From Pecten maximus (taxonomy: Eukaryota): DNA of 64,000 nucleotides. The notes beneath the pieces are model-generated. The model saw only the letters and a program-made list of their open reading frames with translations. It had not been told where the DNA came from and did not search any database. This document shows positions 11,997 through 63,762 of the stretch, one piece after another; positions within the stretch are counted from its first letter, which is position 1, and every line of letters starts with the position of its first letter. Made by a program: the position numbers and the translations under genes. Where the stretch lies: NCBI RefSeq assembly GCF_902652985.1, contig NC_047020.1:25110001-25174000 (forward strand). Reading direction: 5' to 3'.

Positions 11997-12171
11997 NNNN
12001 NNNNNNNNNNNNNNNNNNNNNNNNNNNNNNNNNNNNNNNNNNNNNNNNNNNNNNNNNNNNNNNNNNNNNNNNNNNNNNNNNNNNNNNNNNNNNNNNNNNN
12101 NNNNNNNNNNNNNNNNNNNNNNNNNNNNNNNNNNNNNNNNNNNNNNNNNNNNNNNNNNNNNNNNNNNNNNN
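11997..12171. other. Assembly gap (175 N)
   Basis: Run of N. Confidence 1.
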
Positions 12172-53209: not shown

Positions 53210-53416
53210 GTCTGTCCTAACAAGGACAGGGTAAATCTTGTGTTACTTCGGACATGTGATCAGTCATCCATGAGTTACCCTGTCCTACCTGAAGGACAGT
53301 GTAAATCTTGTGTTACTTCGGACACGTGATCAGTCATCCATGAGTTACCCTGTCCTACATGAAGGAAAACATGAATCCTGTGATATTTTGGATAATGGTC
53401 AGTCATCCATGAGTGA
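53210..53416. repeat. ~70-bp tandem repeat (x3) overlapping the kinase stop codon
   Basis: CAGTCATCCATGAGT at 53261, 53331 and 53400. Confidence 0.85.
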
Positions 53417-56400
53417 CCAACTACTGGCCACAGACTGTGGTGGACTGTTCGGGTCTTCTCCTAGAGCCATCCGCCTGCTGGAAACAGCCTGAAAAAATAG
53501 TGTATCCATGATGTATTTTTCAGTAACTCTTTAATACTTCATACAAGTACAAGTGTATATGGAATCTTAAATATTTATATACATTACGACCAGGAGTCAT
53601 GATCAGCAACTTAATCTCTTAATTACTTATAAAAGGCCAAAACATAACCTCTGACTCGGATGTCAAAATAAAATTCCTGACGCTAGATTATTTTGTTGTT
53701 CAAAATTATTAATGTCACAAATTATCCAAAAAGTTTAGGGGAGGGCTTATTTGTGAACCGCTTTAAGCTTACTATTTTAAAAAGGATGATTCTGCAAAAA
53801 TGAAGAAGGGCACTTATTTGAGAATAAACAAGCATGCTGGGTATTGCTAAAGCAATACATGTCCCCTACCGATCCCCGCCAAAAATTGTAACAGTGATCT
53901 TGACCTTGACCCAAAAACCCTGAAAGTCGAACTTGATCTGTAGGTACTAATACTGAAGTTACATTCCAATTTTCATCAACACACCTTGTCAATGAATACC
54001 TCGAGGTAAATGGCTGAGAAAAGTGTGGAAAACAACTGAGTGGACGGACCGACAGACGGACAGGGAGGAGCCCTGTATAGTCCCCATGGTTTCACAGGTA
54101 GGGGACTAATAAGACTCTGCCATATTGTCTATGGAATATTTCAGTCTATCTTTCAAAATACACAGAGAACATGCATGTACATTAATCCTAGTAACAAACA
54201 ACTGCAATGTTTGATAATAAAACCCCCCTAAATGTACAAAATGTATCTGACCTTTTTGAGTATTTCTGCAATGGACACCATGGTACTCTTTTTGACATGT
54301 CTGAGGTCATGAAGTTGACTTGGGTGAGGTTTGGAGGTGGAGTGTAGGACTTCTCTTTGATCACGTAGATCCTTGGACTTTACTAAAAGTGGAGAATTGT
54401 CCATATTCTCTGTTGGAGGAATTCCACATTGCAATCCACGGTTAGTAGCACGTGATGGCTGCGGGAGGTCCTTAGAAATGATGGCAGGCTTAACAACCTG
54501 TTTCTTGCCACTTGTCACTGCGAGAATTGGGGGTGGGGGTGGGGCAGGCGGTGGTGGTGGTGGGACCGATGGGGGAGGGGATTGAGATGCAATGTGTTCA
54601 GTCTCTACACCATTTTGAAGATTTCTTTTATTTGGACTAGGTACATCACATTTCATGCGTGAAAGTGAATCATCAGTAGACTTTCTTTTGACTGTAGAAT
54701 GATACAGATTTCCTGTGGGTCCATTATTTTTCCTGCCTGATTTGTGTTTTTGTTGATTGGACTGCAAGGAAAGTAACTGGCCAGATGTTTTTTCATCTGC
54801 AGAATTCTCTTGATCTGAGAAATGTCCTAGATTTTGAAGTTTATTACTTAGCTCAGCCATCCAATTTGTAGATGATCCAACTCTGGGTTTCTCATTGACC
54901 TGATCGGACTTCAAACTTTTTGTCGGGGTTTCAGCTGTTTTCAATCCAGTAGGTTTAGGCTTCATCTGAGGTCTTGGGCTTGCTCGAGAATTTTTTGGGT
55001 AATTATCTAAATTATCCTCGAGGCTGTCTCGTAACTGTGGTGAATCGAGACTATCAGAATCAATACTGCCAACACTTTGTACCTCAATGTCCTGTGATAT
55101 ATTGAGGCTGTCCCGACTGATATTCCCAGTAGTCTTTTTTTTGAAGCTGAGTAGAAGCTGGTGATTTGCTTTGATCAATCACTGCCCCACGTGGGTCAAC
55201 TTCCATTATGCTTGACACAGATGGTGGGCTGTCCTGTTTACTTTTCCTCAGAGACTTTCCTGTATTGATGACTTGACGCTGGAATTCCTTTGCATCTCTT
55301 CCTGATCTTGGAGTTACTTGTACACTGGCCTGAGCACAAATATCCACCTTGTCATTTGATTTTTGTGTCACATTTTGTACACTTTTCCTTAAAACATTTT
55401 TGCTATTTCTCACTTCACTTAGTAAATTTTGTCTTAAATCTACAGATGATTTTCCTTTTATCTCAACATCACTACTATTGCGGATGTCACTCATAAGACT
55501 TTTTCTCAAGTCTCCACTTTTTTTGCTGAACTCCAAGCTGTCACTGTTACGGAATCCTTGCATCACACCTGTTCGGCTATCAGTTTGTCCTGTTCCTGAG
55601 TTTATTGAAGTAGTAGAATTAGTACTCATATCTCTGGAATTGTTATTACAATTTGGCTGTGGAGAATTAATCTCCTTTCTTGGAGAGCTAGACACCACAG
55701 GATTTTTTACATCATAAGAATGTTTGACATCAGTGCAACTAGCTGTAAAACTCTTTCTGACACTGATCTGATTCTGGTGATACTTGTCAGTTTCTGTACT
55801 ATTTCTTATTGACCTTTGACTTTCTGCAGTTTTACTGTTTCTGACATTTTCCATCCCATCCTGGAAAACTTGAGAACTTCTCCAAGTGTCTTGACTATTC
55901 CTGAGAGACCTAGCCGTATCTGGTGAACTTTTAAAAGGATTTGTATCTGGGGAACTGCGACTGCTCCTTAAAGATTTAGGTGTCCCTTGGGAACTATCCT
56001 CTCTCCCTGTGGGTATGACAAGAGGTTCAACAGGCTTTCGATGTGATTCACTATTCATTTGTGCAAAATGTTCTCGTGGAGACCGAACAGAGTTTATTTT
56101 TCTTGGACTCAAATCTCTTGATTGGAGAACTTCATTCAAAACATCCTGAGATTTTCTATTAGCACTTGTTGGCCTAATTTCGGCTGACCTGTTAGTATAA
56201 TCGCTTTGATTTGGTGATGGAGAGCGCTGACTGACTTTGCTAGATCCTTCCTCTGGTTCTGGGTATGTACCAAATGATCGTTTGAGTTTTATATCCTCAA
56301 TGAGACTTTTGGCATTGGCAGTGTCTAGAGAGTTGGTGACAAGACTGATTAAGGTTCGGGTAGAGTGTACATCCTCCAGTGCCTCTGGAGGAACTCCTGC

Positions 56401-59400
56401 CTCGCGAAACAGATCTTGCCACTCAGAGGGAAATGTCATATCTTCCAACTGTGTCAGGATATCCTGTAGCAAAGAGTGTACAACAAATTACACACATGTT
56501 AAATGACTTATCAAACAGCTGTTTTACCCAAATATAAGTTTATGCATATTTGATTAATATTAAAGAATAATTGACACATCTAGAAAACTAATTGTTTTTT
56601 CTTGTACATTAATTGTTTCAAAATTTGCTAAATCCTTCAATTTGAATTTGAATGAGTTATCTCCCTTGCATCAGATAACCAATTACACATCAATGATGGC
56701 ATCTCTTGTGTCAAATACTGTATACAGGTGCAAGATAGACTGAACAAGACTGAAAAGTTTAAGATTAGGTTCAGAATGAGATTTCCTGGTCAAATGGACA
56801 TATATTAAAACTAGAGGTAATACCTGGTACAATATGCATGTGCATGATAAAAAATTCCAGAAGGAATATATATGACTCATTAAATTGTCATTATATTTTA
56901 AGTTTATAGATTTTTATTACAATAACTTATTAAGGTTTTTTCTTGTTAGTACTAAAAAAAAGTCCAAGTTCAGAGGCATTGTTGATTGAATGGCTTTAAG
57001 CATTTTACCTTGAAGGGAGGTCGTTTGGATGGAACAGGTGCCCAACACTGCTGTACAAACTTGGCCAGTTCTGTAGGACAGCTTGGGGGTATCTCAGGTC
57101 TCTTGTTCAATCTTACCCTCTCCAGAACCTAAAAAAACAGTACCACTGATTATCAGTGGATACCATCTGTACCTTACTTATACCCCATTCCCACATCATG
57201 ATTAACATACTAAAATTCATACGCCATGATTCCCATACTAAAATTCGCACATCATGATTCCCATACTAAAATTCACACACCATGATTCCCAAACTAAAAT
57301 TCACACACCATGATTCCCAAACTAAAATTCACACACCATGATTCCCATATTAAAATGCACACACCATGATTCCCATATTAAAATGCACATACCATCATTC
57401 TCATAGTAAAATTCACACACCATGATTCCCATACTTAAATTCACACACCGTGATTCCCATACTTAGATTCACACACCATGATTCCCATACTTAAATTCTC
57501 ACACCATGTCATGATTCCCATACCTAAATTCACACACCATGATTCCCATACTTAAATTCACACACCATGATTCCCATAACAAAATGCACAACCATGATTT
57601 TCATACATGTACTTCACACACCATGATTCCCATTAAAATCTGAACGACATGATTCCAAACTAAAATCACACACCATATGATTCTCATACTAAAATTTACA
57701 CACCATGATTCCCATAGTAAAATGCACACATCATGATTTCCACACATGTGCTTCACATACCATGATTCTCATACCATGATCCCAACATCATTATTCTTCT
57801 CATAGCACAAATCCCACACTAGTGTTTTCAATACCATATACTGTAACCAGAGTATCGTATCCCATTCAGATACCATAATTTCCTATGGACTACATACAAT
57901 AAAGGATTTAATTAAACAAGGTACACTGTGCCAGCAGGTAACTTTAATTTTTTCACAGCTTACCTGGAACACTGAACATCCGTCATATGGCTGTTTTCTC
58001 GTCAACATTTCCCAGAGTATAATACCAAAGCTGTACACGTCAGCCTTGGGAGTAAGCTCCCCTGTCTCCAGGAGCTCGGGGGCCATCCACGCAGGGCTGC
58101 CATGGACTGGTTTAGATTTTGATATCTTTGTGGCCTTCAAGTTAGCATCATATCTGTGATTACAATTTTACATAAGGATTAGCTGTATCGATTATTAATC
58201 TGTACATATAACACTATGTGTGACTTACAATTTATTTTATCTTTAAAACAATATCACATCTAGTTTTCAATTGTACATTTCCAAAAGTGAGATAAAAATG
58301 AAAGAGAAATCATAAAGACTCTGTTAATATTATTTGAAGAATTAGGCCTTATAATGACTACAAGTGAGTGTGGAAAAACCATGGGTTACTGACTTACACT
58401 ATACATTGTAAATTTATACAAACATGTCTACAAATTATACTCGGAAAGAGGGAAACAAAAATATTCAATTCAAAATTTTAATCCTGCTGGTCACAATATT
58501 TCAATCTTGAAAATCCTGAAAAATATGTGGGAGACAGTGCCAACTGATCTAAAAAAAACTTTAACAACCAAATGGAGCCTTTAAATGTTTACTAGCTATT
58601 ACACTGATGTGTCCTTTTAGGAGTACATACTATATGGTGGCCAAGAAATGCTTGATACAAATCGCTCTGCCATTAACGTGTAATATAAACCTATAATATA
58701 TTATGTGTATATATAAAAGACTTTACATAGCAACTTAGACTTCTGTTTTAGAACTAAACTTACCAACATGTTTTAGAACTAAACTTACCAACATATTAAG
58801 GTGAAAATCTTTTCCTAAAGACTGTTCATACATAATATTCATATACCAGTAAATGTTTTCATTGGATAAGAAGTTCTAGAGAGAAGAATGTATTAACTAA
58901 TGGATGAACTTGAATATCACATCAAAATAGGTTCTGTCTACAGGGGATCACAATCACACAACAAATATATTTGATATTCCATTAAGCTGAAAAAAATGCC
59001 ATAAATAAGCGACGGCATGCGTGCATGTCTTTATAATAGAAGAAAATTCCAGCGAGCTTGAATGTGTCACAGAAAACTGAGGTACACACATGATCACTCT
59101 GTAGTGGGTAGGAGGTATACACAGGAACTAAATATAGTGGCTCTCATCTGTTACACATCACTTTCATCTCTCAGTAAATTATTAATGTTTCTACAAATTA
59201 ATATGTCTTTAAATCAAGTTTTCTGTAAAATATAAGAATTTGCAACACTATTATACAAACAATATATCAGGGTGTACATTTGTATATTGCCAATGAATTT
59301 TAAACAGCTAGAACAGAAATGTGGTTACTTGATATATTGTATGTCAAAAGAATTTTAATATGATGTATTTTACCAAACAAACCAGATTTGTATACAAATT

Positions 59401-62400
59401 CAAAGAATCTATTTTCTCCACTCCATATCCATGCATAGCCATCATTGAGATTTAATTGTGTAGATTGATCTATTTAATACCGTGTATATGCATACAAAAT
59501 TAGGTCAATATGTTTTTGTAAAAGTCAAAACATATATAGCAGCTGTGTACATTTACTTATTGGTTTTATAAAAAATTATCGTTTAATATGCATAACATTA
59601 CAATTTTGAAACACATTTTTAATCCATTACCAAAATAATAGTTCCATGCAGGGCTACCCTACATTTGTAACTTGGAATAGGAATGGTACCAAAGAATGAA
59701 GCTAAAGCCAATAAGAAACATACAGAGAAGTATTTTCCCACTGAACCCTGACTAACGCATGCAACAGGGCTGCCAGCCTCACAACTCATTCATCGACCCC
59801 AAAACTACCATGATTCTGGACAAACCTGCACCCTATTGATCTATATATGAGCATGAGGTTTTTACATGCAGCAGCTATATGCAGTGGACCAGAAGCAGAT
59901 TTTCTTGCCAACCAGTTTGAGATAACACACCAAATATACAGGTACCGATAGATTCAGCCAGGATGATTTTTGTGATGTCCACCAAACACTTTGATTTAAG
60001 GTTAAACATATACATTACTTCATACTTTTTCTGTCTTTGATTTTAAAGGAAGGCAAGAAACACAATCTATCTCTAGGAATGTGCCTGAGATATCATACAG
60101 ACATGTAACATATCTTCTTTCTCAGAGAAAACTTTAGTTAGTACTCTATCTGAAAAATCTGAATCTCTCTAAAATTACATGTGAAATTCAAAGATTAACC
60201 TGTTAAAACATGATCAACAATAGATTAATTGTGTCTCCCCTGGTTAGGAAGATTTTGATCAATGATAAAGTTCCGATCAATATATCCATCAGTATCATTT
60301 AATAAGCACCTAGCTAGAAGGGGGCAATATATTATTTTTCACTCAAAGCAAGAGGTGGACTAATAATTTGGTAGCATTTTTACTGACTATACATGTACAG
60401 CTGAAATCGTCCTGACTGGTTTATTGTAAGACATGGGTTTTTTTTTACCGGGAAATCAGGCAAATTGACTCCAGGAAAAGAAACTATTGTAACAAGCTTA
60501 CATGAGCCTTCAGCTAAGGGGAGCTTAAAGATCTAGCACATCATGTTTTGGAGTTATGACATGTATGACAGTTATTAAAAACTGATGAGAGATCTTCAGT
60601 TTTATTTTGTTTTTGATCCCTATACTATGTCGTAATGACTTTACCTACACAGGGTATCCCAGAGAGAGATTAGATTTAACCTAGCACCAGCTTTCTTTGT
60701 CTAGCAGTGTAAAGTGAGCACTCAAAACTCTGCCACACAGACACCACAAGAGTGAAGAGACGTGTATCATATGTTTGTGTCTTATATGCAAATCTCAACA
60801 TCAAACAGAATTGCGTGCAGCAGTAAAAAATCGTGACATTTGTACTTTCGTAATAGCTGTAGTGGTGCATTTCTGAAAGATAATAAAATAGTCTCACACA
60901 AATACACTTATATACAGGTTGTGTTCATAAATTTATTGTCTTCATTAATTATCTTTAATTCATAAAGCACTAAAAGAAAGTAGATGTGCTATCTAATAAA
61001 TTATTTGCAAGATCTGACATCTAGAAATTAATATTAGTATAGCAAGTATCTTATCTAATAACCAGGGATTCTGATTTCCTGTCCAATCCAATATATGATT
61101 TCATAACCCCATTTCTTATGTTATAAACTAACAAATTAATCCTTTATGTTCTGACATCCTGTCAAATCTGATTGAAATTTGTGTCCTACGGTGTATGAAA
61201 GGCGCTACACTAGTGTCAGTTTCCCCAATGAAAATATGTAAATCTTCTGATTAGAATTAAATGATAAAAATGGTAAAATATGTTGAAGCAAACAACAGCA
61301 AGGCATTATTACTTTTGCCAGAGACAACACTAAATACATGTACATTACTATGATTACAACAGCTGAGCTAATATTTAATGCTTCAACAAATTACACAGCT
61401 CACATCTTCCTAAAAGCACCAGCTAAACTCCCCCCAAAAAAACATAAGCCTACCTTAATTTTGAGAATCCAAAGTCAGCAATTTTAGCTCGATCATTACT
61501 ACAGATGAGGACATTCATAGATTTGAGGTCGAGGTGAAGCACTGCTGGTTTTTGTTGATGAAGGTAGGCCATCCCGAGAGCAATGTCGTGAGAGATTCGG
61601 AAATACTCAGCATGGTCCAGGGGCTCTCTGTTAAACATTGATACTCATTTATATATACCTATACCTATGTTTTATAAATCCAAAATACAATATTGCAAAT
61701 AGAACATAATGCAGCCAGGAAATATATCTAAGAACAGGTCCAGGAAACTTACATGTATAAATGTGACTACAAAGTTTCAGTAAGATATACAATGCATTTA
61801 GAATAAATTCAATGGAATAGTAGGTGATGGACTACATGTAGATTGGGCTTGTCCATGATCACATGGCATTCCAAACAAGAAATATCTTTAAAAAAGATAA
61901 AAGGCATAGTTTTAATGCTGGTGGTTATAATTTAAACTGCTGGTGAAATAAATGAACGAACTAATGTGTTTCAGCACAGATAACAAAATTATATCAGTTT
62001 GAATCATTTTTGGTGATAATAAGAATATATTTGAATCAGGAATATGATTTTATTAATGGGTAATTTGAAAAGATACATGCACTTATTCAGCTTGCATTCA
62101 ATCTTAACTTTATTTCGTTTTTAACTGCATATCTGCATTTTGCATTGACCGCTACATTGACCAATTACATACTTCATCTTAACCAGTAAAGCCACCTGTT
62201 GCAGCATATCTGGGCCAAAAGAATATTATACGGCTATGCCGAAAAAAAACCAGAAGCTCATTGTCTACTCCAACAATGTGAATGGTAATATGGTCAGAAA
62301 CTATGACAGGGGCCTGGTAACATCCTCATATTACAGGGTCAGAAACTATGACAGGGGCCTGGTAACATCCTCATATTACAGGGTCAGAAACTATGACAGG

Positions 62401-63762
62401 GGTCTGGTAACATCCTCATATTACAGGGTCAGAAACTATGACAGGGGCCTGGTAACATCCTCATATTACAGGGTCAGAAACTTACTACAGGGGCCTGGTA
62501 ACATATTCATATTAAATGGTCAGAAACTTACTACAGGCCGGGGCCTGGTAACATCCTCATATTACATGGTCAGAAACTTACTACAGGGGCCTGGTAACAT
62601 ATTCATATTACATGGTCAGAAACTTACTACAGGGGCCTGGTAACATATTCATATTACATGGTCAGAAACTATGACAGGGGCCTGGTAACATCCTCATATT
62701 ACATGGTCAGAAACTATGACAGGGGCCTGATAACATCCTCATATTACATGGTCAGAAACTATGACAGGGGCCTGATAACATCCTAACACGGTCAGAAACT
62801 TACTACAGGGGCCTGGTAACATCCTCATATTACATGGTCAGAAACTTACTACAGGGGTCTGGTAACATCCTCATATTACATGGTCAGAAACTTACTACAG
62901 GGGCCTGGTAACATCCTCATATTACATGGTCAGAAACTTACTACAGGGGCCTGGTAACATCCTCATATTACACGGTCAGAAACTATGACAGGGGCCTGAT
63001 AACATCCTCATATTACATGGTCAGAAACTATGACAGGGGCCTGGTAACATCCTCATATTACACGGTCAGAAACTTATAACAGGGGCCTGATAACATCCTC
63101 ATATTACACGGTCAGAAACTATGACAGGGGCCTGGTAACATCCTCATATTACACGGTCAGAAACTTATAACAGAGGCCTGGTAACATCCTCATATTACAT
63201 GGTCAGAAACTATGACAGGGGTCTGGTAACATCCTCATATTACATGGTCAGAAACTATGACAGGGGCCTGGTAACATCCTCATATTACATGGTCAGAAAC
63301 TTATGACAGGGGCCTGGTAACATCCTCATATTACAGAGTCAGAAACTTACTACAGGGGCCTGGTAACATCCTCATATTACATGGTCAGAAACTTACTGCA
63401 GGGGCCTGGTAACATCCTCATATTACATGGTCAGAAACTTATGACAGGGGCCTTGTAATATCATCATATTACACGGTCAGAAAGCTTATGACAGGTGGCT
63501 AGTAACAGTAAGCACAATAATGTCAGATAATAAATTGACCGACCATGTCTAGCAGCCTCCTATGTTATAGGAGTACACATTACCCAGCTATATTCTAAAT
63601 CACCCTGTAGAAATATGGCCCTTACCTGGCAGTGCTATGGAGATGGTGATAGAGACTCCCTCTGGCCATATACTCTAAAACCATCAGAGGAAGTCTGCTT
63701 GAACTACACACACCCATCAGTAATACCACTCGGGGATGACGCAGGTCTCGCAGCAAACTCAC
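53399..63762 (-). CDS. TKL-group (MAP3K/Raf-like) protein kinase, 5'-partial, with long low-complexity WASP-like tail; exons 63762-63626, 61627-61454, 58153-57964, 57128-57009, 56463-54252 (1-bp frameshift at 55135-55142), 53488-53399
   Basis: Subdomains IV-XI splice in frame: LRHPRVVLLMG, LEYMARGSL, HLDLKSMNVL, KIADFGFS, GSPAWMAPE, DVYSFGIILWEM and CW....KRPPF. All introns are GT-AG. The N-lobe lies beyond the window. Confidence 0.9.
53827..54112 (-). mobile_element. Short complete HINE in last kinase intron
   Basis: Minus strand starts TTATTAGTCCCCTACC...GGGGACTA hairpin, then (CCGT/CTGT)n. It ends GGTAGGGGAC, hairpin GTATTGCT-T-TAGCAATAC, then CTTGTTT. Confidence 0.8.
57190..57800. repeat. 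28-bp minisatellite CACACACCATGATTCCCATACTAAAATT in kinase intron
   Basis: About 20 visible copies. Confidence 0.95.
62292..63505. repeat. 45-46 bp minisatellite GGTCAGAAACT(T)ATGACAGGGGCCTGGTAACATCCTCATATTACA in kinase intron
   Basis: About 26 copies with two variants (CTATGAC / CTTACTAC). Confidence 0.97.

What the first reader, a model, noticed from the sequence alone, without database searches (positions are those of the whole stretch)
53399..56463. TKL kinase fused to a WASP-like actin-regulatory tail
Seen: directly after the kinase domain is FPSEWQDLFREAGVPPEALEDVHSTRTLISLV (56433-56338). It resembles the autoinhibitory post-CRIB part of the WASP GBD (LF..AG.....L.D......I). WH2-like repeats follow: DLRKSLMSDIRN (~55512), DLRQNLLSEVRNSKNVLRKSV (55440-55378) and INTGKSLRKS. 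Then come a poly-Pro tract (~54580-54530), LHDLRHVKK, an amphipathic IAEILKKAVSSRRMAL similar to the WASP/WAVE C helix, and a terminal SSWSLMDD with Trp and acidic residues. Known: GBD-PRD-WH2-C-A is the nucleation-promoting-factor layout that activates Arp2/3. Inference: a kinase-NPF fusion, an architecture I do not recognise from well-studied animal kinases.
Basis: partly seen in the sequence, partly recalled or inferred. Interest (0 to 1): 0.78.

Follow-up and report, generated by a model that had tools for sequence, protein, structure and literature searches.

The report
Kinase with WASP-like autoinhibited actin tail
A scallop gene, conserved from a single-celled relative of animals to amphioxus but never studied, joins an apparently active protein kinase to a tail laid out and predicted to fold like the self-inhibited actin-branching switch of WASP proteins; this kinase-plus-actin-nucleator design appears undescribed and its activity is untested.

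Summary
The genome is Pecten maximus.

**Gene model**
- The motifs lie exactly where stated, on the minus strand of a roughly 19-kb, at least 17-exon gene. It encodes a protein of about 2000 aa: N-terminal region, SAM domain, TKL kinase, then a long tail.
- RNA contigs from three studies confirm the splice junctions.
- All of them lack one base of an A8 run. The "frameshift" is therefore an assembly or individual indel, and the tail is one open frame.

**What is conserved**
Orthologues occur in molluscs, a brachiopod, crustaceans, echinoderms, hemichordates, amphioxus and an ichthyosporean. They share:
- a post-kinase helical module (invariant Trp);
- a positionally fixed poly-Pro tract;
- a V-like motif;
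- an amphipathic C helix (invariant Arg);
- a Ser/acid-rich end with an invariant Trp.

**Support for the WASP reading**
- In an AlphaFold2 model, the best of 48,161 PDB representatives is the WASP autoinhibited GBD–C core. The match spans both the post-kinase module and the C helix.
- Language-model neighbours of the C-terminus are WH2/WCA fragments.

**Against it**
- Pfam and my own HMMs do not significantly link the tail to canonical WH2, C or A segments.
- There is no CRIB motif.
- The acidic region is weak.
- Arp2/3 activation is inferred, not shown.

The parts
63625..63762 (-). Kinase exon (subdomains IV-V). Earlier exons, including the Gly-loop/VAVK exon and the SAM-domain exon, lie beyond the window end in L004 (G000:C6:25174001-25184000).
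   Evidence: Pfam PK_Tyr_Ser-Thr 1.3e-08. tblastn of the Argopecten orthologue P0165 maps collinearly onto L004:8299 down to window:53402. SAM_1 1.7e-12 in L004:5654-7474.
61453..61629 (-). Kinase exon carrying the catalytic loop (HLDLKSMN) and DFG motif.
   Evidence: Pfam Pkinase 2.2e-12. 100% identical to Argopecten over 59 aa.
57964..58155 (-). Kinase exon (activation segment, APE, subdomain IX).
   Evidence: Pfam 5.9e-13. RNA junction 57964|57128. The upstream boundary is approximate.
57009..57128 (-). Last kinase exon (subdomains X-XI).
   Evidence: Pfam 1.8e-06. RNA junctions on both sides. GT/AG sites read.
54252..56463 (-). Large tail exon, about 737 aa once the indel is corrected. Mostly Ser/Pro/Arg-rich and predicted disordered.
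   Evidence: A continuous RNA contig covers 54565-56462 and is joined to the kinase exons. 68-69% identical to Argopecten.
56338..56433 (-). Post-kinase GBD-like module (helix, short helix, long helix; invariant Trp). It resembles the post-CRIB autoinhibitory part of WASP/PAK GBDs. No CRIB motif is present.
   Evidence: Conserved from Chromosphaera to amphioxus. About 100% identical between Pecten and Argopecten. Pfam PBD sub-threshold in amphioxus. AF2 pLDDT 75-93. VIA-align rank 1 is WASP 1t84.
55378..55512 (-). Two WH2-like repeats found only in scallops. They sit inside a stretch that, on my reading of the translation (no tool tested it), is a degenerate xRNSx repeat region.
   Evidence: Pfam WH2 E=0.12, 12.6 bits, below the cut-off, on the helix part only. 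Absent from all non-pectinid orthologues. The second repeat is a local conservation peak against Argopecten.
55135..55142 (-). A8 homopolymer run. The assembly has one base too many, which creates a false stop at 55084-55086.
   Evidence: One base is left out at 55134/55135 in the contigs of all 4 RNA runs. Argopecten reads through. The NCBI model P0001 is truncated here.
54528..54578 (-). Poly-proline tract, a candidate profilin/SH3-binding region.
   Evidence: It is the only such tract (or tract cluster) in these proteins. It lies 123-153 aa from the C-terminus in Mytilus, Potamilus, Haliotis, Patella, Ptychodera, Branchiostoma and Patiria.
54288..54392 (-). Conserved V-like element (h-x-h-x4-L-x2-Q-K-x2-L-R/K-P/S-V, then PHPSQLxDL). 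It is a candidate G-actin-binding (WH2- or RPEL-like) segment.
   Evidence: Conserved in all 15 lineages aligned. The Chromosphaera version resembles a WH2/thymosin motif on my reading. AF2 predicts a short helix with pLDDT 66-74. No HMM link to canonical WH2.
54252..54275 (-). First half of the amphipathic C helix (SIAEILKK). It is split from the second half by the last intron (53489-54251).
   Evidence: Junction seen in 4 RNA runs. Alignment.
53402..53488 (-). Last coding exon. It holds the second half of the C helix (invariant Arg in the RR pair) and a Ser/acid-rich end with an invariant Trp six residues from the stop.
   Evidence: 28 of 29 residues identical to Argopecten. Invariant R1483 and W1502 in alignment A1. 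AF2 C helix pLDDT 81-94. The ESM Atlas neighbours of the corresponding C-terminal stretch of the orthologue P0015 carry WH2.

Best explanation
The region is the 3' half of a single-copy, expressed Pecten maximus gene. The gene encodes a protein of about 2000 aa: N-terminal region, SAM domain, coiled coil, catalytically intact TKL kinase, then a long disordered tail with a structured element at each end.

**Anatomy (shown)**
- Immediately after the kinase lies a three-helix module of the WASP/PAK post-CRIB GBD type, without a CRIB motif.
- At the extreme C-terminus lies a module ordered poly-Pro, V-like motif, amphipathic C helix, Ser/acid-rich end with an invariant Trp. This is the PRD-V-C-A order of WASP-family nucleation-promoting factors.

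**Proposed mechanism**
- Predicted, not measured: in the resting state the GBD-like module binds the C helix in cis, as in autoinhibited WASP, and probably rests on the kinase C-lobe.
- Inferred: release of the C helix would free the V-C-A end to bind G-actin and the Arp2/3 complex and start branched actin assembly. Because there is no CRIB, release would not come from Cdc42/Rac. Plausible triggers are kinase activation, autophosphorylation of the Ser-rich tail, or SAM-mediated clustering.
- Inferred: SAM oligomerisation would also raise potency, as dimerisation does for WASP proteins.

The gene model, its expression, the conservation and the predicted fold are shown here. Actin and Arp2/3 binding, and any kinase-tail coupling, are inferred.
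For: **Gene and expression**
- RNA contigs confirm the junctions and remove the frameshift.
- The orthologue P0165 maps collinearly.
- The gene is single-copy in the genome.

**Family**
- Orthologues occur in Mytilus, Potamilus, Solemya, Argopecten, Haliotis, Patella, Aplysia, Plakobranchus, Bulinus, Lingula, Hyalella, Macrobrachium, Antedon, Patiria, Asterias, Amphiura, Ptychodera, Saccoglossus, Branchiostoma and the ichthyosporean Chromosphaera.
- All are annotated as uncharacterised or carry automatically assigned names.

**Conservation**
- Three tail residues are invariant: the Trp of the post-kinase motif, an Arg of the C helix and the terminal Trp.
- The poly-Pro position is fixed.
- The last exon is 97% identical between scallops, against 68% for the rest of the tail.

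**Structure**
- AF2 gives pLDDT 90-94 for the post-kinase helices and the C helix in Macrobrachium P0081.
- It gives 75-84 in the kinase-less Saccoglossus fragment P0036.
- VIA-align of the P0036 model against 48,161 PDB representatives ranks 1t84 first. This is the WASP autoinhibited GBD-C core. Z is 6.4, rmsd 2.4 A, 67 residues aligned, 18% identity, model range 66-437, so the match spans both modules.

**Sequence-level leads**
- Pfam PBD at E=0.009-0.05 on profile positions 24-52 in four amphioxus orthologues.
- My post-kinase HMM ranks two PAK post-CRIB exons 7th and 8th of 9,563 ORF segments.
- ESM Atlas: the three nearest named clusters to the C-terminal 84 aa all carry WH2. One is made of WHAMM C-terminal fragments. 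Scores are 0.88, 0.87 and 0.82, with 175 shared features for the first.

**Independent role for the C-terminal module**
- The three heterobranch gastropod lineages (Aplysia, Plakobranchus, Bulinus) have lost the GBD-like module but keep the V-C-W module.
- So the C-terminal module has a partner other than the GBD-like module.
Against: - No Pfam WH2 or PBD hit reaches the curated cut-off in any member.
- Genome-wide Pfam WH2 and PBD scans of Pecten do not flag this locus.
- HMMs built from the family's V, C and CA modules do not rank Pecten's own N-WASP WH2 or C exons, or its WASH VCA exon, above noise. Ranks were 26, 264 and 428 of 9,563.
- phmmer of the Pecten pieces against PDB sequences finds nothing.
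- The spacing between the V-like helix and its L-R-P-V is shorter than in canonical WH2.
- The 'A' region has only 2-7 acidic residues in the last 25. The Trp is followed by Ser rather than flanked by Asp/Glu.
- There is no CRIB motif.
- Z=6.4 is a middling score for a helical model, and the next unrelated row is at 5.9.
- AF2 was trained on WASP structures and may be pattern-matching.
- The Atlas scores are below 0.9, so they are leads only.
- There is no experimental datum on actin or Arp2/3.
Confidence: 0.5

Rival explanations
1. A PAK-like kinase switch with no nucleation activity. The GBD-like module and the C-terminal helix form an intramolecular clamp whose job is to regulate the kinase, as the PAK1 inhibitory switch domain does. 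The poly-Pro, V-like and Trp elements would be docking sites for SH3 or other partners, not for actin or Arp2/3.
For: - The GBD-like module abuts the kinase. Its pLDDT, and that of the C helix, rise when the full kinase is present: 90-94 against 75-84.
- My post-kinase HMM ranks PAK exons above the N-WASP exon.
- HMMs give no link to canonical V, C or A segments.
- The tail end is only weakly acidic.
Against: - Heterobranch gastropods lost the GBD-like module yet keep the whole V-C-W module, with its hydrophobic face intact. The helix therefore has another ligand.
- The conserved order PRD, V-like, C, terminal Trp and the WH2-bearing Atlas neighbours are unexplained by a pure kinase clamp.
- The best structural match is the WASP GBD-C core, not PAK.
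Confidence: 0.28
2. An unrelated short-motif tail. The C-terminal amphipathic basic helix and the Trp would be a different kind of linear motif, such as a calmodulin-binding helix or an adaptor- or motor-binding Trp motif. The WASP resemblance would be convergence plus AlphaFold pattern-matching.
For: - All sequence-profile tests against WH2, C and A are negative.
- Z=6.4 is within the range that helical models reach by chance (note).
- The Atlas scores are below 0.9.
Against: - It had the lowest rmsd and the highest identity among the top rows, and it covered both distant segments.
- Four separate layout features match the WASP order.
- Pfam PBD matches exactly the post-CRIB positions.
Confidence: 0.17
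3. A decaying pseudogene or mis-assembled locus. The frameshift would be real and everything downstream of 55087 would not be translated, as in the NCBI model P0001.
For: The assembly has an in-frame stop at 55084-55086. The NCBI model ends there.
Against: - All four RNA runs lack one base of the A8 run and continue into the last exon.
- Argopecten reads through.
- The last exon is 97% conserved.
Confidence: 0.02

Closest known systems
WASP / N-WASP (autoinhibited GBD-PRD-V-C-A nucleation-promoting factors)
   Same: - The order is GBD helices, long linker, poly-Pro, V-like motif, amphipathic C helix with a conserved Arg, C-terminal Trp.
- The predicted GBD-like/C-helix packing best matches the WASP autoinhibited core 1t84.
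- The C-helix hydrophobic register h-xx-hh-xx-hh-xx-R-xxx-h lines up without gaps with Pecten N-WASP's own C exon, L009:800-931. This is my reading.
   Different: - There is no WH1 domain and no CRIB.
- A SAM domain and a TKL kinase lie upstream.
- The V element is not a canonical WH2 by Pfam or HMM.
- The A region is Ser-rich and only mildly acidic.
- There is no significant sequence-profile link.
PAK kinases (CRIB/GBD inhibitory switch plus kinase)
   Same: - A GBD-type helical module and a kinase sit in one polypeptide.
- The P-x-x-W-x-x-L-L/F start of the module resembles the PAK post-CRIB segment. PAK exons are the best canonical hits of my HMM.
   Different: - In PAK the GBD is N-terminal to an STE20-group kinase and has a CRIB.
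- Here it follows a TKL kinase, lacks a CRIB, and is predicted to bind a distant C-terminal helix.
MLK-group MAP3Ks: ZAK (kinase-LZ-SAM), MLK3 (SH3-kinase-LZ-CRIB), DLK; plant CTR1
   Same: - These are the closest solved kinase domains (CTR1, DLK and ZAK).
- From general knowledge, ZAK combines a TKL kinase with a SAM domain, and MLK3 has a CRIB after the kinase.
   Different: - The SAM domain is N-terminal here.
- There is no leucine zipper-CRIB arrangement.
- None of these has a V-C-A-like end.
Spire (KIND domain plus four WH2)
   Same: From general knowledge, Spire is the only well-known actin nucleator built on a kinase-derived fold followed by actin-binding motifs.
   Different: - KIND is a non-catalytic C-lobe relic, whereas this kinase keeps its Lys, HxD, DFG and APE motifs.
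- Spire nucleates without Arp2/3 and has no C/A element.
WHAMM/JMY and WASH C-terminal WCA segments
   Same: - The ESM Atlas neighbours of the C-terminus include WHAMM C-terminal fragments.
- Pecten WASH's C motif, with its RR-x-x-h-x-G-E stretch (L035:910-1686), resembles the family's RR-x-A-h-G-E on my reading.
   Different: My CA HMM ranks the WASH exon only 428th of 9,563. WASH has a strongly acidic DDDDDDWDD end.

Membership tests
WASP-family nucleation-promoting factors | WH2 (V) motif that binds G-actin | tested here: inconclusive
   - Pfam WH2 is not reached in any of 17+6 members. The only hit is E=0.12 on a scallop-specific repeat.
- The family V HMM ranks the N-WASP WH2 exon 26th of 9,563, at 3.6 bits.
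- The Atlas neighbours carry WH2.
- The Chromosphaera version looks canonical by eye.
WASP-family nucleation-promoting factors | Amphipathic connector (C) helix with a conserved Arg | tested here: inconclusive
   - The pattern, an invariant Arg and a confident AF2 helix are present.
- The helix is predicted to sit where the WASP C helix sits.
- There is no HMM link to the N-WASP or WASH C segments.
WASP-family nucleation-promoting factors | Acidic (A) end with a conserved Trp | tested here: inconclusive
   The Trp is invariant, 2-10 residues from the end. Only 2-7 Asp/Glu occur in the last 25 residues, and the Trp is followed by Ser.
WASP-family nucleation-promoting factors | Proline-rich region upstream of V | tested here: met
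   A poly-Pro tract (or tract cluster) lies 123-153 aa from the C-terminus in seven other lineages, and at the equivalent place in Pecten and Argopecten.
WASP-family nucleation-promoting factors | Stimulates Arp2/3-dependent actin nucleation | not testable with these tools
   This needs biochemistry. The one co-folding job with actin gave no verdict.
WASP/PAK GTPase-binding domain (Pfam PBD) | CRIB motif (I-S-x-P-x2-4-F-x-H-x2-H-V-G) | tested here: not met
   A regex scan of 21 family members found none. The module starts directly after the kinase.
WASP/PAK GTPase-binding domain (Pfam PBD) | Post-CRIB autoinhibitory helices | tested here: inconclusive
   - The fold-level test is met: the AF2 model's best PDB match is the WASP autoinhibited core.
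- The sequence-level test is sub-threshold only: Pfam PBD positions 24-52, 14-17 bits against a cut-off of 21.3.
TKL-group protein kinases | Complete catalytic core, closest to TKL kinases | tested here: met
   - Pfam PK_Tyr_Ser-Thr matches on all exons.
- VAVK, HLD, DFG and APE can be read.
- The best PDB sequences are CTR1, DLK and ZAK.
- Foldseek finds CTR1 and TAK1.
SAM domain proteins | SAM_1/SAM_2 domain | tested here: met
   L004:5654-7474 hits SAM_1 at 1.7e-12. 10 of 17 orthologues hit SAM. The domain lies outside the window.

The most novel reading that the evidence does not exclude
This is a new, ancient class of Arp2/3 nucleation-promoting factor in which a WASP-style GBD/C-helix lock and a V-C-A output are hard-wired to a SAM-clustered TKL kinase. 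Actin branching would then be switched by the protein's own kinase rather than by a Rho GTPase, for example by phosphorylating its Ser-rich A region or the lock. The class would have been present in the holozoan ancestor and lost from vertebrates and the classic invertebrate models.
Probability: 0.3. Interest if true: 0.9.

Novelty: new variant of a known kind. Interest (0 to 1): 0.76.

Why it matters
Known Arp2/3 activators (WASP, WAVE, WASH, WHAMM/JMY, WHIMP, and the proposed WAWH and WAML) all receive kinase and GTPase signals from other proteins. None contains a kinase itself. A 2012 census of the family lists no such member (PMC3298513), and my literature searches found no description of one.

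A kinase carrying its own autoinhibited WCA-like output would be a one-protein signalling-to-actin module. It would also extend the WASP GBD/C-helix lock outside the WASP family proper. Its age is notable: it occurs in an ichthyosporean, in non-vertebrate deuterostomes, in lophotrochozoans and in crustaceans.

Its apparent absence from the usual model organisms would explain why it has been overlooked. That absence is not demonstrated here.

The hypothesis is directly testable with standard pyrene-actin and binding assays.

On the practical side, the NCBI model for this Pecten gene is truncated by a homopolymer indel and should be corrected.

Tried and rejected
1. **Pfam on the Pecten exons and short in-frame pieces at E up to 10**. 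Only the kinase matched, plus one WH2 hit at E=0.12 on a non-conserved repeat.
2. **Pfam on 23 orthologues**. SAM and kinase matched. PBD was sub-threshold and only in amphioxus. There was no WH2 hit.
3. **Genome-wide Pfam WH2 and PBD scans of Pecten**. They find N-WASP, WIP-like and PAK genes but not this locus.
4. **phmmer of the GBD-like piece and of the last exon against PDB sequences**. Nothing was found.
5. **Local HMMs of the four modules against six-frame ORF segments**. The segments included Pecten N-WASP (L015, L009, L023), WASH (L035), WIP-like and PAK exons. Only the PAK exons rose into the top 10, at about 5.5 bits. The V, C and CA models did not find canonical segments.
6. **Co-folding of scallop actin with the Mytilus tail end** (actin as two exon chains from L026; P0005 residues 2222-2304). 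The score was 0.02, which the tool reports as no verdict. This is not evidence either way.
7. **Foldseek on both models**. It saw only the kinase parts.
8. **ESM Atlas on the post-kinase module**. No usable hit.
9. **An intronless actin-like ORF (L030)** was considered as an actin chain. It was rejected as too divergent.
10. **Searches for a WHAMM/JMY WCA exon downstream of the Pecten JMY-domain exons (L036, L037)** found none within 20 kb.
11. **A tRNA scan of the highly covered 53825-53870 intron element** found nothing.
12. **The pseudogene reading** was rejected on the RNA evidence.
13. **Joined spliced model.** Exons were searched separately by reference, and full-length analyses used orthologue proteins returned by the tools.

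Full report
**1. What is in the sequence**

They belong to a multi-exon animal gene. A word search identifies the genome as Pecten maximus. The NCBI model P0001 is 540 aa, is named "probable serine/threonine-protein kinase DDB_G0268876", is 100% identical to the window, and stops at 55087.

- **Kinase exons.** These lie at about 63762-63625, 61629-61453, 58155-57964 and 57128-57009. Each matches Pfam kinase models.
- **Tail exons.** A 2.2-kb exon (56463-54252) and a last coding exon (53488-53402) encode the tail.
- **RNA support.** Contigs from four runs in three studies show the junctions 57964|57128, 57009|56463 and 54252|53488. The GT/AG sites were read.
- **The frameshift.** Every run lacks one base of the A8 run at 55142-55135. 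The apparent frameshift is therefore an assembly or individual indel, and the tail is one open frame.
- **Polymorphism.** Three of the four runs also carry an in-frame 6-nt insertion after 55747.
- **Full extent.** The window is G000:C6:25110001-25174000. Upstream DNA (L004) holds the Gly-loop kinase exon and a 607-aa exon with a SAM domain.
- **Orthologue mapping.** The Argopecten irradians orthologue P0165 (2008 aa) maps collinearly over 17 exons, from L004:8299 to window:53402.
- **Copy number.** The gene is single-copy in the genome.
- **Method limit.** Full-length analyses used orthologue proteins.

**2. A conserved, uncharacterised family**

A full HMMER search with P0001 found proteins of 830-2300 aa whose match runs past the kinase. 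A word search restricted to the tail of P0015 added more.

| Group | Genera |
|---|---|
| Bivalves | Mytilus, Potamilus, Solemya, Argopecten |
| Gastropods | Haliotis, Patella, Aplysia, Plakobranchus, Bulinus |
| Brachiopod | Lingula |
| Crustaceans | Hyalella, Macrobrachium |
| Echinoderms | Antedon, Patiria, Asterias, Amphiura |
| Hemichordates | Ptychodera, Saccoglossus |
| Cephalochordate | Branchiostoma |
| Ichthyosporean | Chromosphaera perkinsii |

All are annotated as uncharacterised or carry automatically assigned names. No vertebrate, insect or nematode member appeared. I did not test absence.

**3. What is conserved in the tail**

The full-length alignment A1 has three invariant tail residues: the Trp of the post-kinase motif, an Arg in the C-terminal helix, and the terminal Trp. 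Local alignments define four elements.

- **(i) Post-kinase module.** It is about 45 aa long and has the form F-P-x-E-W-R-x-L-F-x2-A-G-I-P-x-E-A-h-x-D-x2-S-A-R-x-I-I-x-L-V.
- **(ii) Poly-Pro tract.** It lies 123-153 aa from the C-terminus in seven other lineages, and at the equivalent place in the scallops.
- **(iii) V-like stretch.** It has the form h-x-h-x4-L-x2-Q-K-x2-L-R/K-P/S-V followed by PHPSQLxDL. In Chromosphaera it looks like a canonical WH2/thymosin motif.
- **(iv) Helix and end.** The helix S-I-A-E-I-L-K-K-A-h-x2-R-R-x-A-h-G-E-D is followed by a Ser/acid-rich stretch ending in W-S-x2-4.

Between Pecten and Argopecten the last exon is 28/29 identical and the post-kinase module about 100% identical. 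The rest of the tail is 68-69% identical.

The second is a local conservation peak there.

The three heterobranch snail lineages have lost element (i) but keep (iii) and (iv) intact.

**4. Tests of the WASP-like reading: positive results**

- **Pfam PBD.** It matches all four amphioxus orthologues scanned at exactly the post-CRIB positions 24-52. Values are E=0.009-0.05 and 14-17 bits, against a cut-off of 21.3.
- **My post-kinase HMM.** It places two Pecten PAK post-CRIB exons 7th and 8th of 9,563 ORF segments.
- **AlphaFold2, Macrobrachium P0081.** With the family alignment, the post-kinase helices score pLDDT 90-93 and the C helix 88-94. About 370 intervening residues score below 50.
- **AlphaFold2, Saccoglossus P0036.** This fragment lacks most of the kinase. 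The same elements still score 75-84.
- **Structural search.** The P0036 model was aligned to 48,161 PDB representatives. Rank 1 is 1t84, the WASP autoinhibited GBD-C core. Z is 6.4, rmsd 2.4 A, 67 residues aligned and 18% identity. The model range 66-437 includes both the post-kinase module and the distant C helix. The following rows are unrelated phage proteins with rmsd 3.4-4.7 A.
- **How I weigh that match.** The Z-score is middling by the tool's own caution.
- **ESM Atlas.** The three nearest named clusters to the last 84 aa of P0015 all carry WH2. One consists of WHAMM C-terminal fragments. Scores are 0.88, 0.87 and 0.82, with 175 shared features for the first. This is a lead only.

**5. 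Tests of the WASP-like reading: negative results**

- No Pfam WH2 or PBD hit reaches threshold.
- Genome-wide WH2 and PBD scans do not flag the locus.
- phmmer against PDB sequences finds nothing.
- I located Pecten's own canonical segments:
  - N-WASP post-CRIB exon, L015:826-1050;
  - N-WASP WH2 exon, L009:1483-2094;
  - N-WASP C exon, L009:800-931;
  - N-WASP A exon, L023:9726-9815;
  - WASH VCA exon, L035:910-1686.
- The family's V, C and CA HMMs do not rank these above noise.
- No member has a CRIB motif. The end is only mildly acidic, with 2-7 Asp/Glu in the last 25 residues.
- Co-folding of scallop actin with the Mytilus tail end gave no verdict.

**6. Interpretation**

*Shown*
- The gene is real, expressed and single-copy.
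- The kinase is a catalytically intact TKL kinase, closest to CTR1, DLK and ZAK.
- The structured elements at the two ends of the tail are conserved across Holozoa.
- Their order matches GBD, PRD, V, C, A.

*Predicted*
- The post-kinase module and the C helix pack as in autoinhibited WASP.

*Inferred*
- The freed V-C-A end binds actin and Arp2/3.
- Because there is no CRIB, release is not GTPase-driven. It may instead depend on the kinase, on phosphorylation of the Ser-rich end, or on SAM-mediated clustering.
- From general knowledge, CK2 phosphorylation of the A region raises Arp2/3 affinity in WASP and WAVE, and dimerisation potentiates VCA.

The retention of V-C-W in snails that lost the GBD-like module argues that the C-terminal module has an external ligand. 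This favours the NPF reading over a pure kinase clamp.

I put about 0.65 on the WASP-like intramolecular lock and about 0.35-0.4 on genuine Arp2/3 activation. For the combined statement as worded I give 0.5.

**7. Novelty**

A census of WASP-family proteins lists no kinase-containing member (PMC3298513). Five full-text searches found no description of such an architecture. I file it as a new variant of a known kind: WASP-type regulatory and output elements on a SAM-TKL kinase scaffold. It is not a demonstrated member of the WASP family, because the WH2, A and activity criteria are unmet or untested.

**8. Housekeeping**

- The N run at 11997-12171 was left untouched.

Noticed in passing
window 55135-55142; NCBI model P0001: The reference assembly has an extra A in an A8 run. 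The public protein model is therefore truncated to 540 aa and starts at an internal Met. RNA contigs and the Argopecten orthologue show the true product is about 2000 aa.
   Followed up: yes
window 55747 and 54990: Three of the four RNA runs carry an in-frame 6-nt insertion after 55747. One run's contig has a single-base insertion in an A6 run at 54990, which is probably a contig error or a rare allele.
   Followed up: no
window 53825-53870 (inside the last intron): A roughly 45-nt element has very high RNA contig depth, up to about 3300. Many different flanks are joined to it, so it looks like a dispersed expressed repeat. ARAGORN finds no tRNA there.
   Followed up: partly
window 57187-57774 (intron between kinase exons): A tandem array of about 21 copies of a 28-nt unit at 80% identity. 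It produces the long spurious 'GIMVCEF...' open frames.
   Followed up: partly
L009:1-560 and L023:9900-10000 (G000:C7, about 22599300-22599960): In the Pecten N-WASP gene, the intron after the C-helix exon holds a tandem array. Its units encode near-copies of the C-helix exon peptide (…VGVLDRALANRQKH…), so the exon appears to have been amplified as an intronic satellite.
   Followed up: no
L005:4700-6920 (G000:C6, about 25188700-25190920): A large tandem repeat lies upstream of the gene and reads as (SCHYVMY)n in one frame. It is a 21-nt satellite, about 2 kb long.
   Followed up: no
window 32001-34000: A strongly strand-biased block with GC 0.50, GC skew -0.91 and AT skew +0.47. It is probably a C/A-rich simple satellite.
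   Followed up: no
L030:500-1636 (G000:C11:23320499-23321635, minus strand): An intronless 378-aa actin-like ORF, much more divergent than the conventional two-exon actin genes (355.7 bits against about 440 bits on Pfam Actin).
   Followed up: no
orthologues P0006 (Haliotis), P0014 (Solemya), P0047 (Aplysia), P0059 (Plakobranchus), just after the poly-Pro tract: Several orthologues carry a second, weaker copy of the V-like motif (h-L-x2-x-x3-K-L-K-P). It lies between the poly-Pro tract and the main V-like motif, which recalls the tandem WH2 pair of N-WASP.
   Followed up: no
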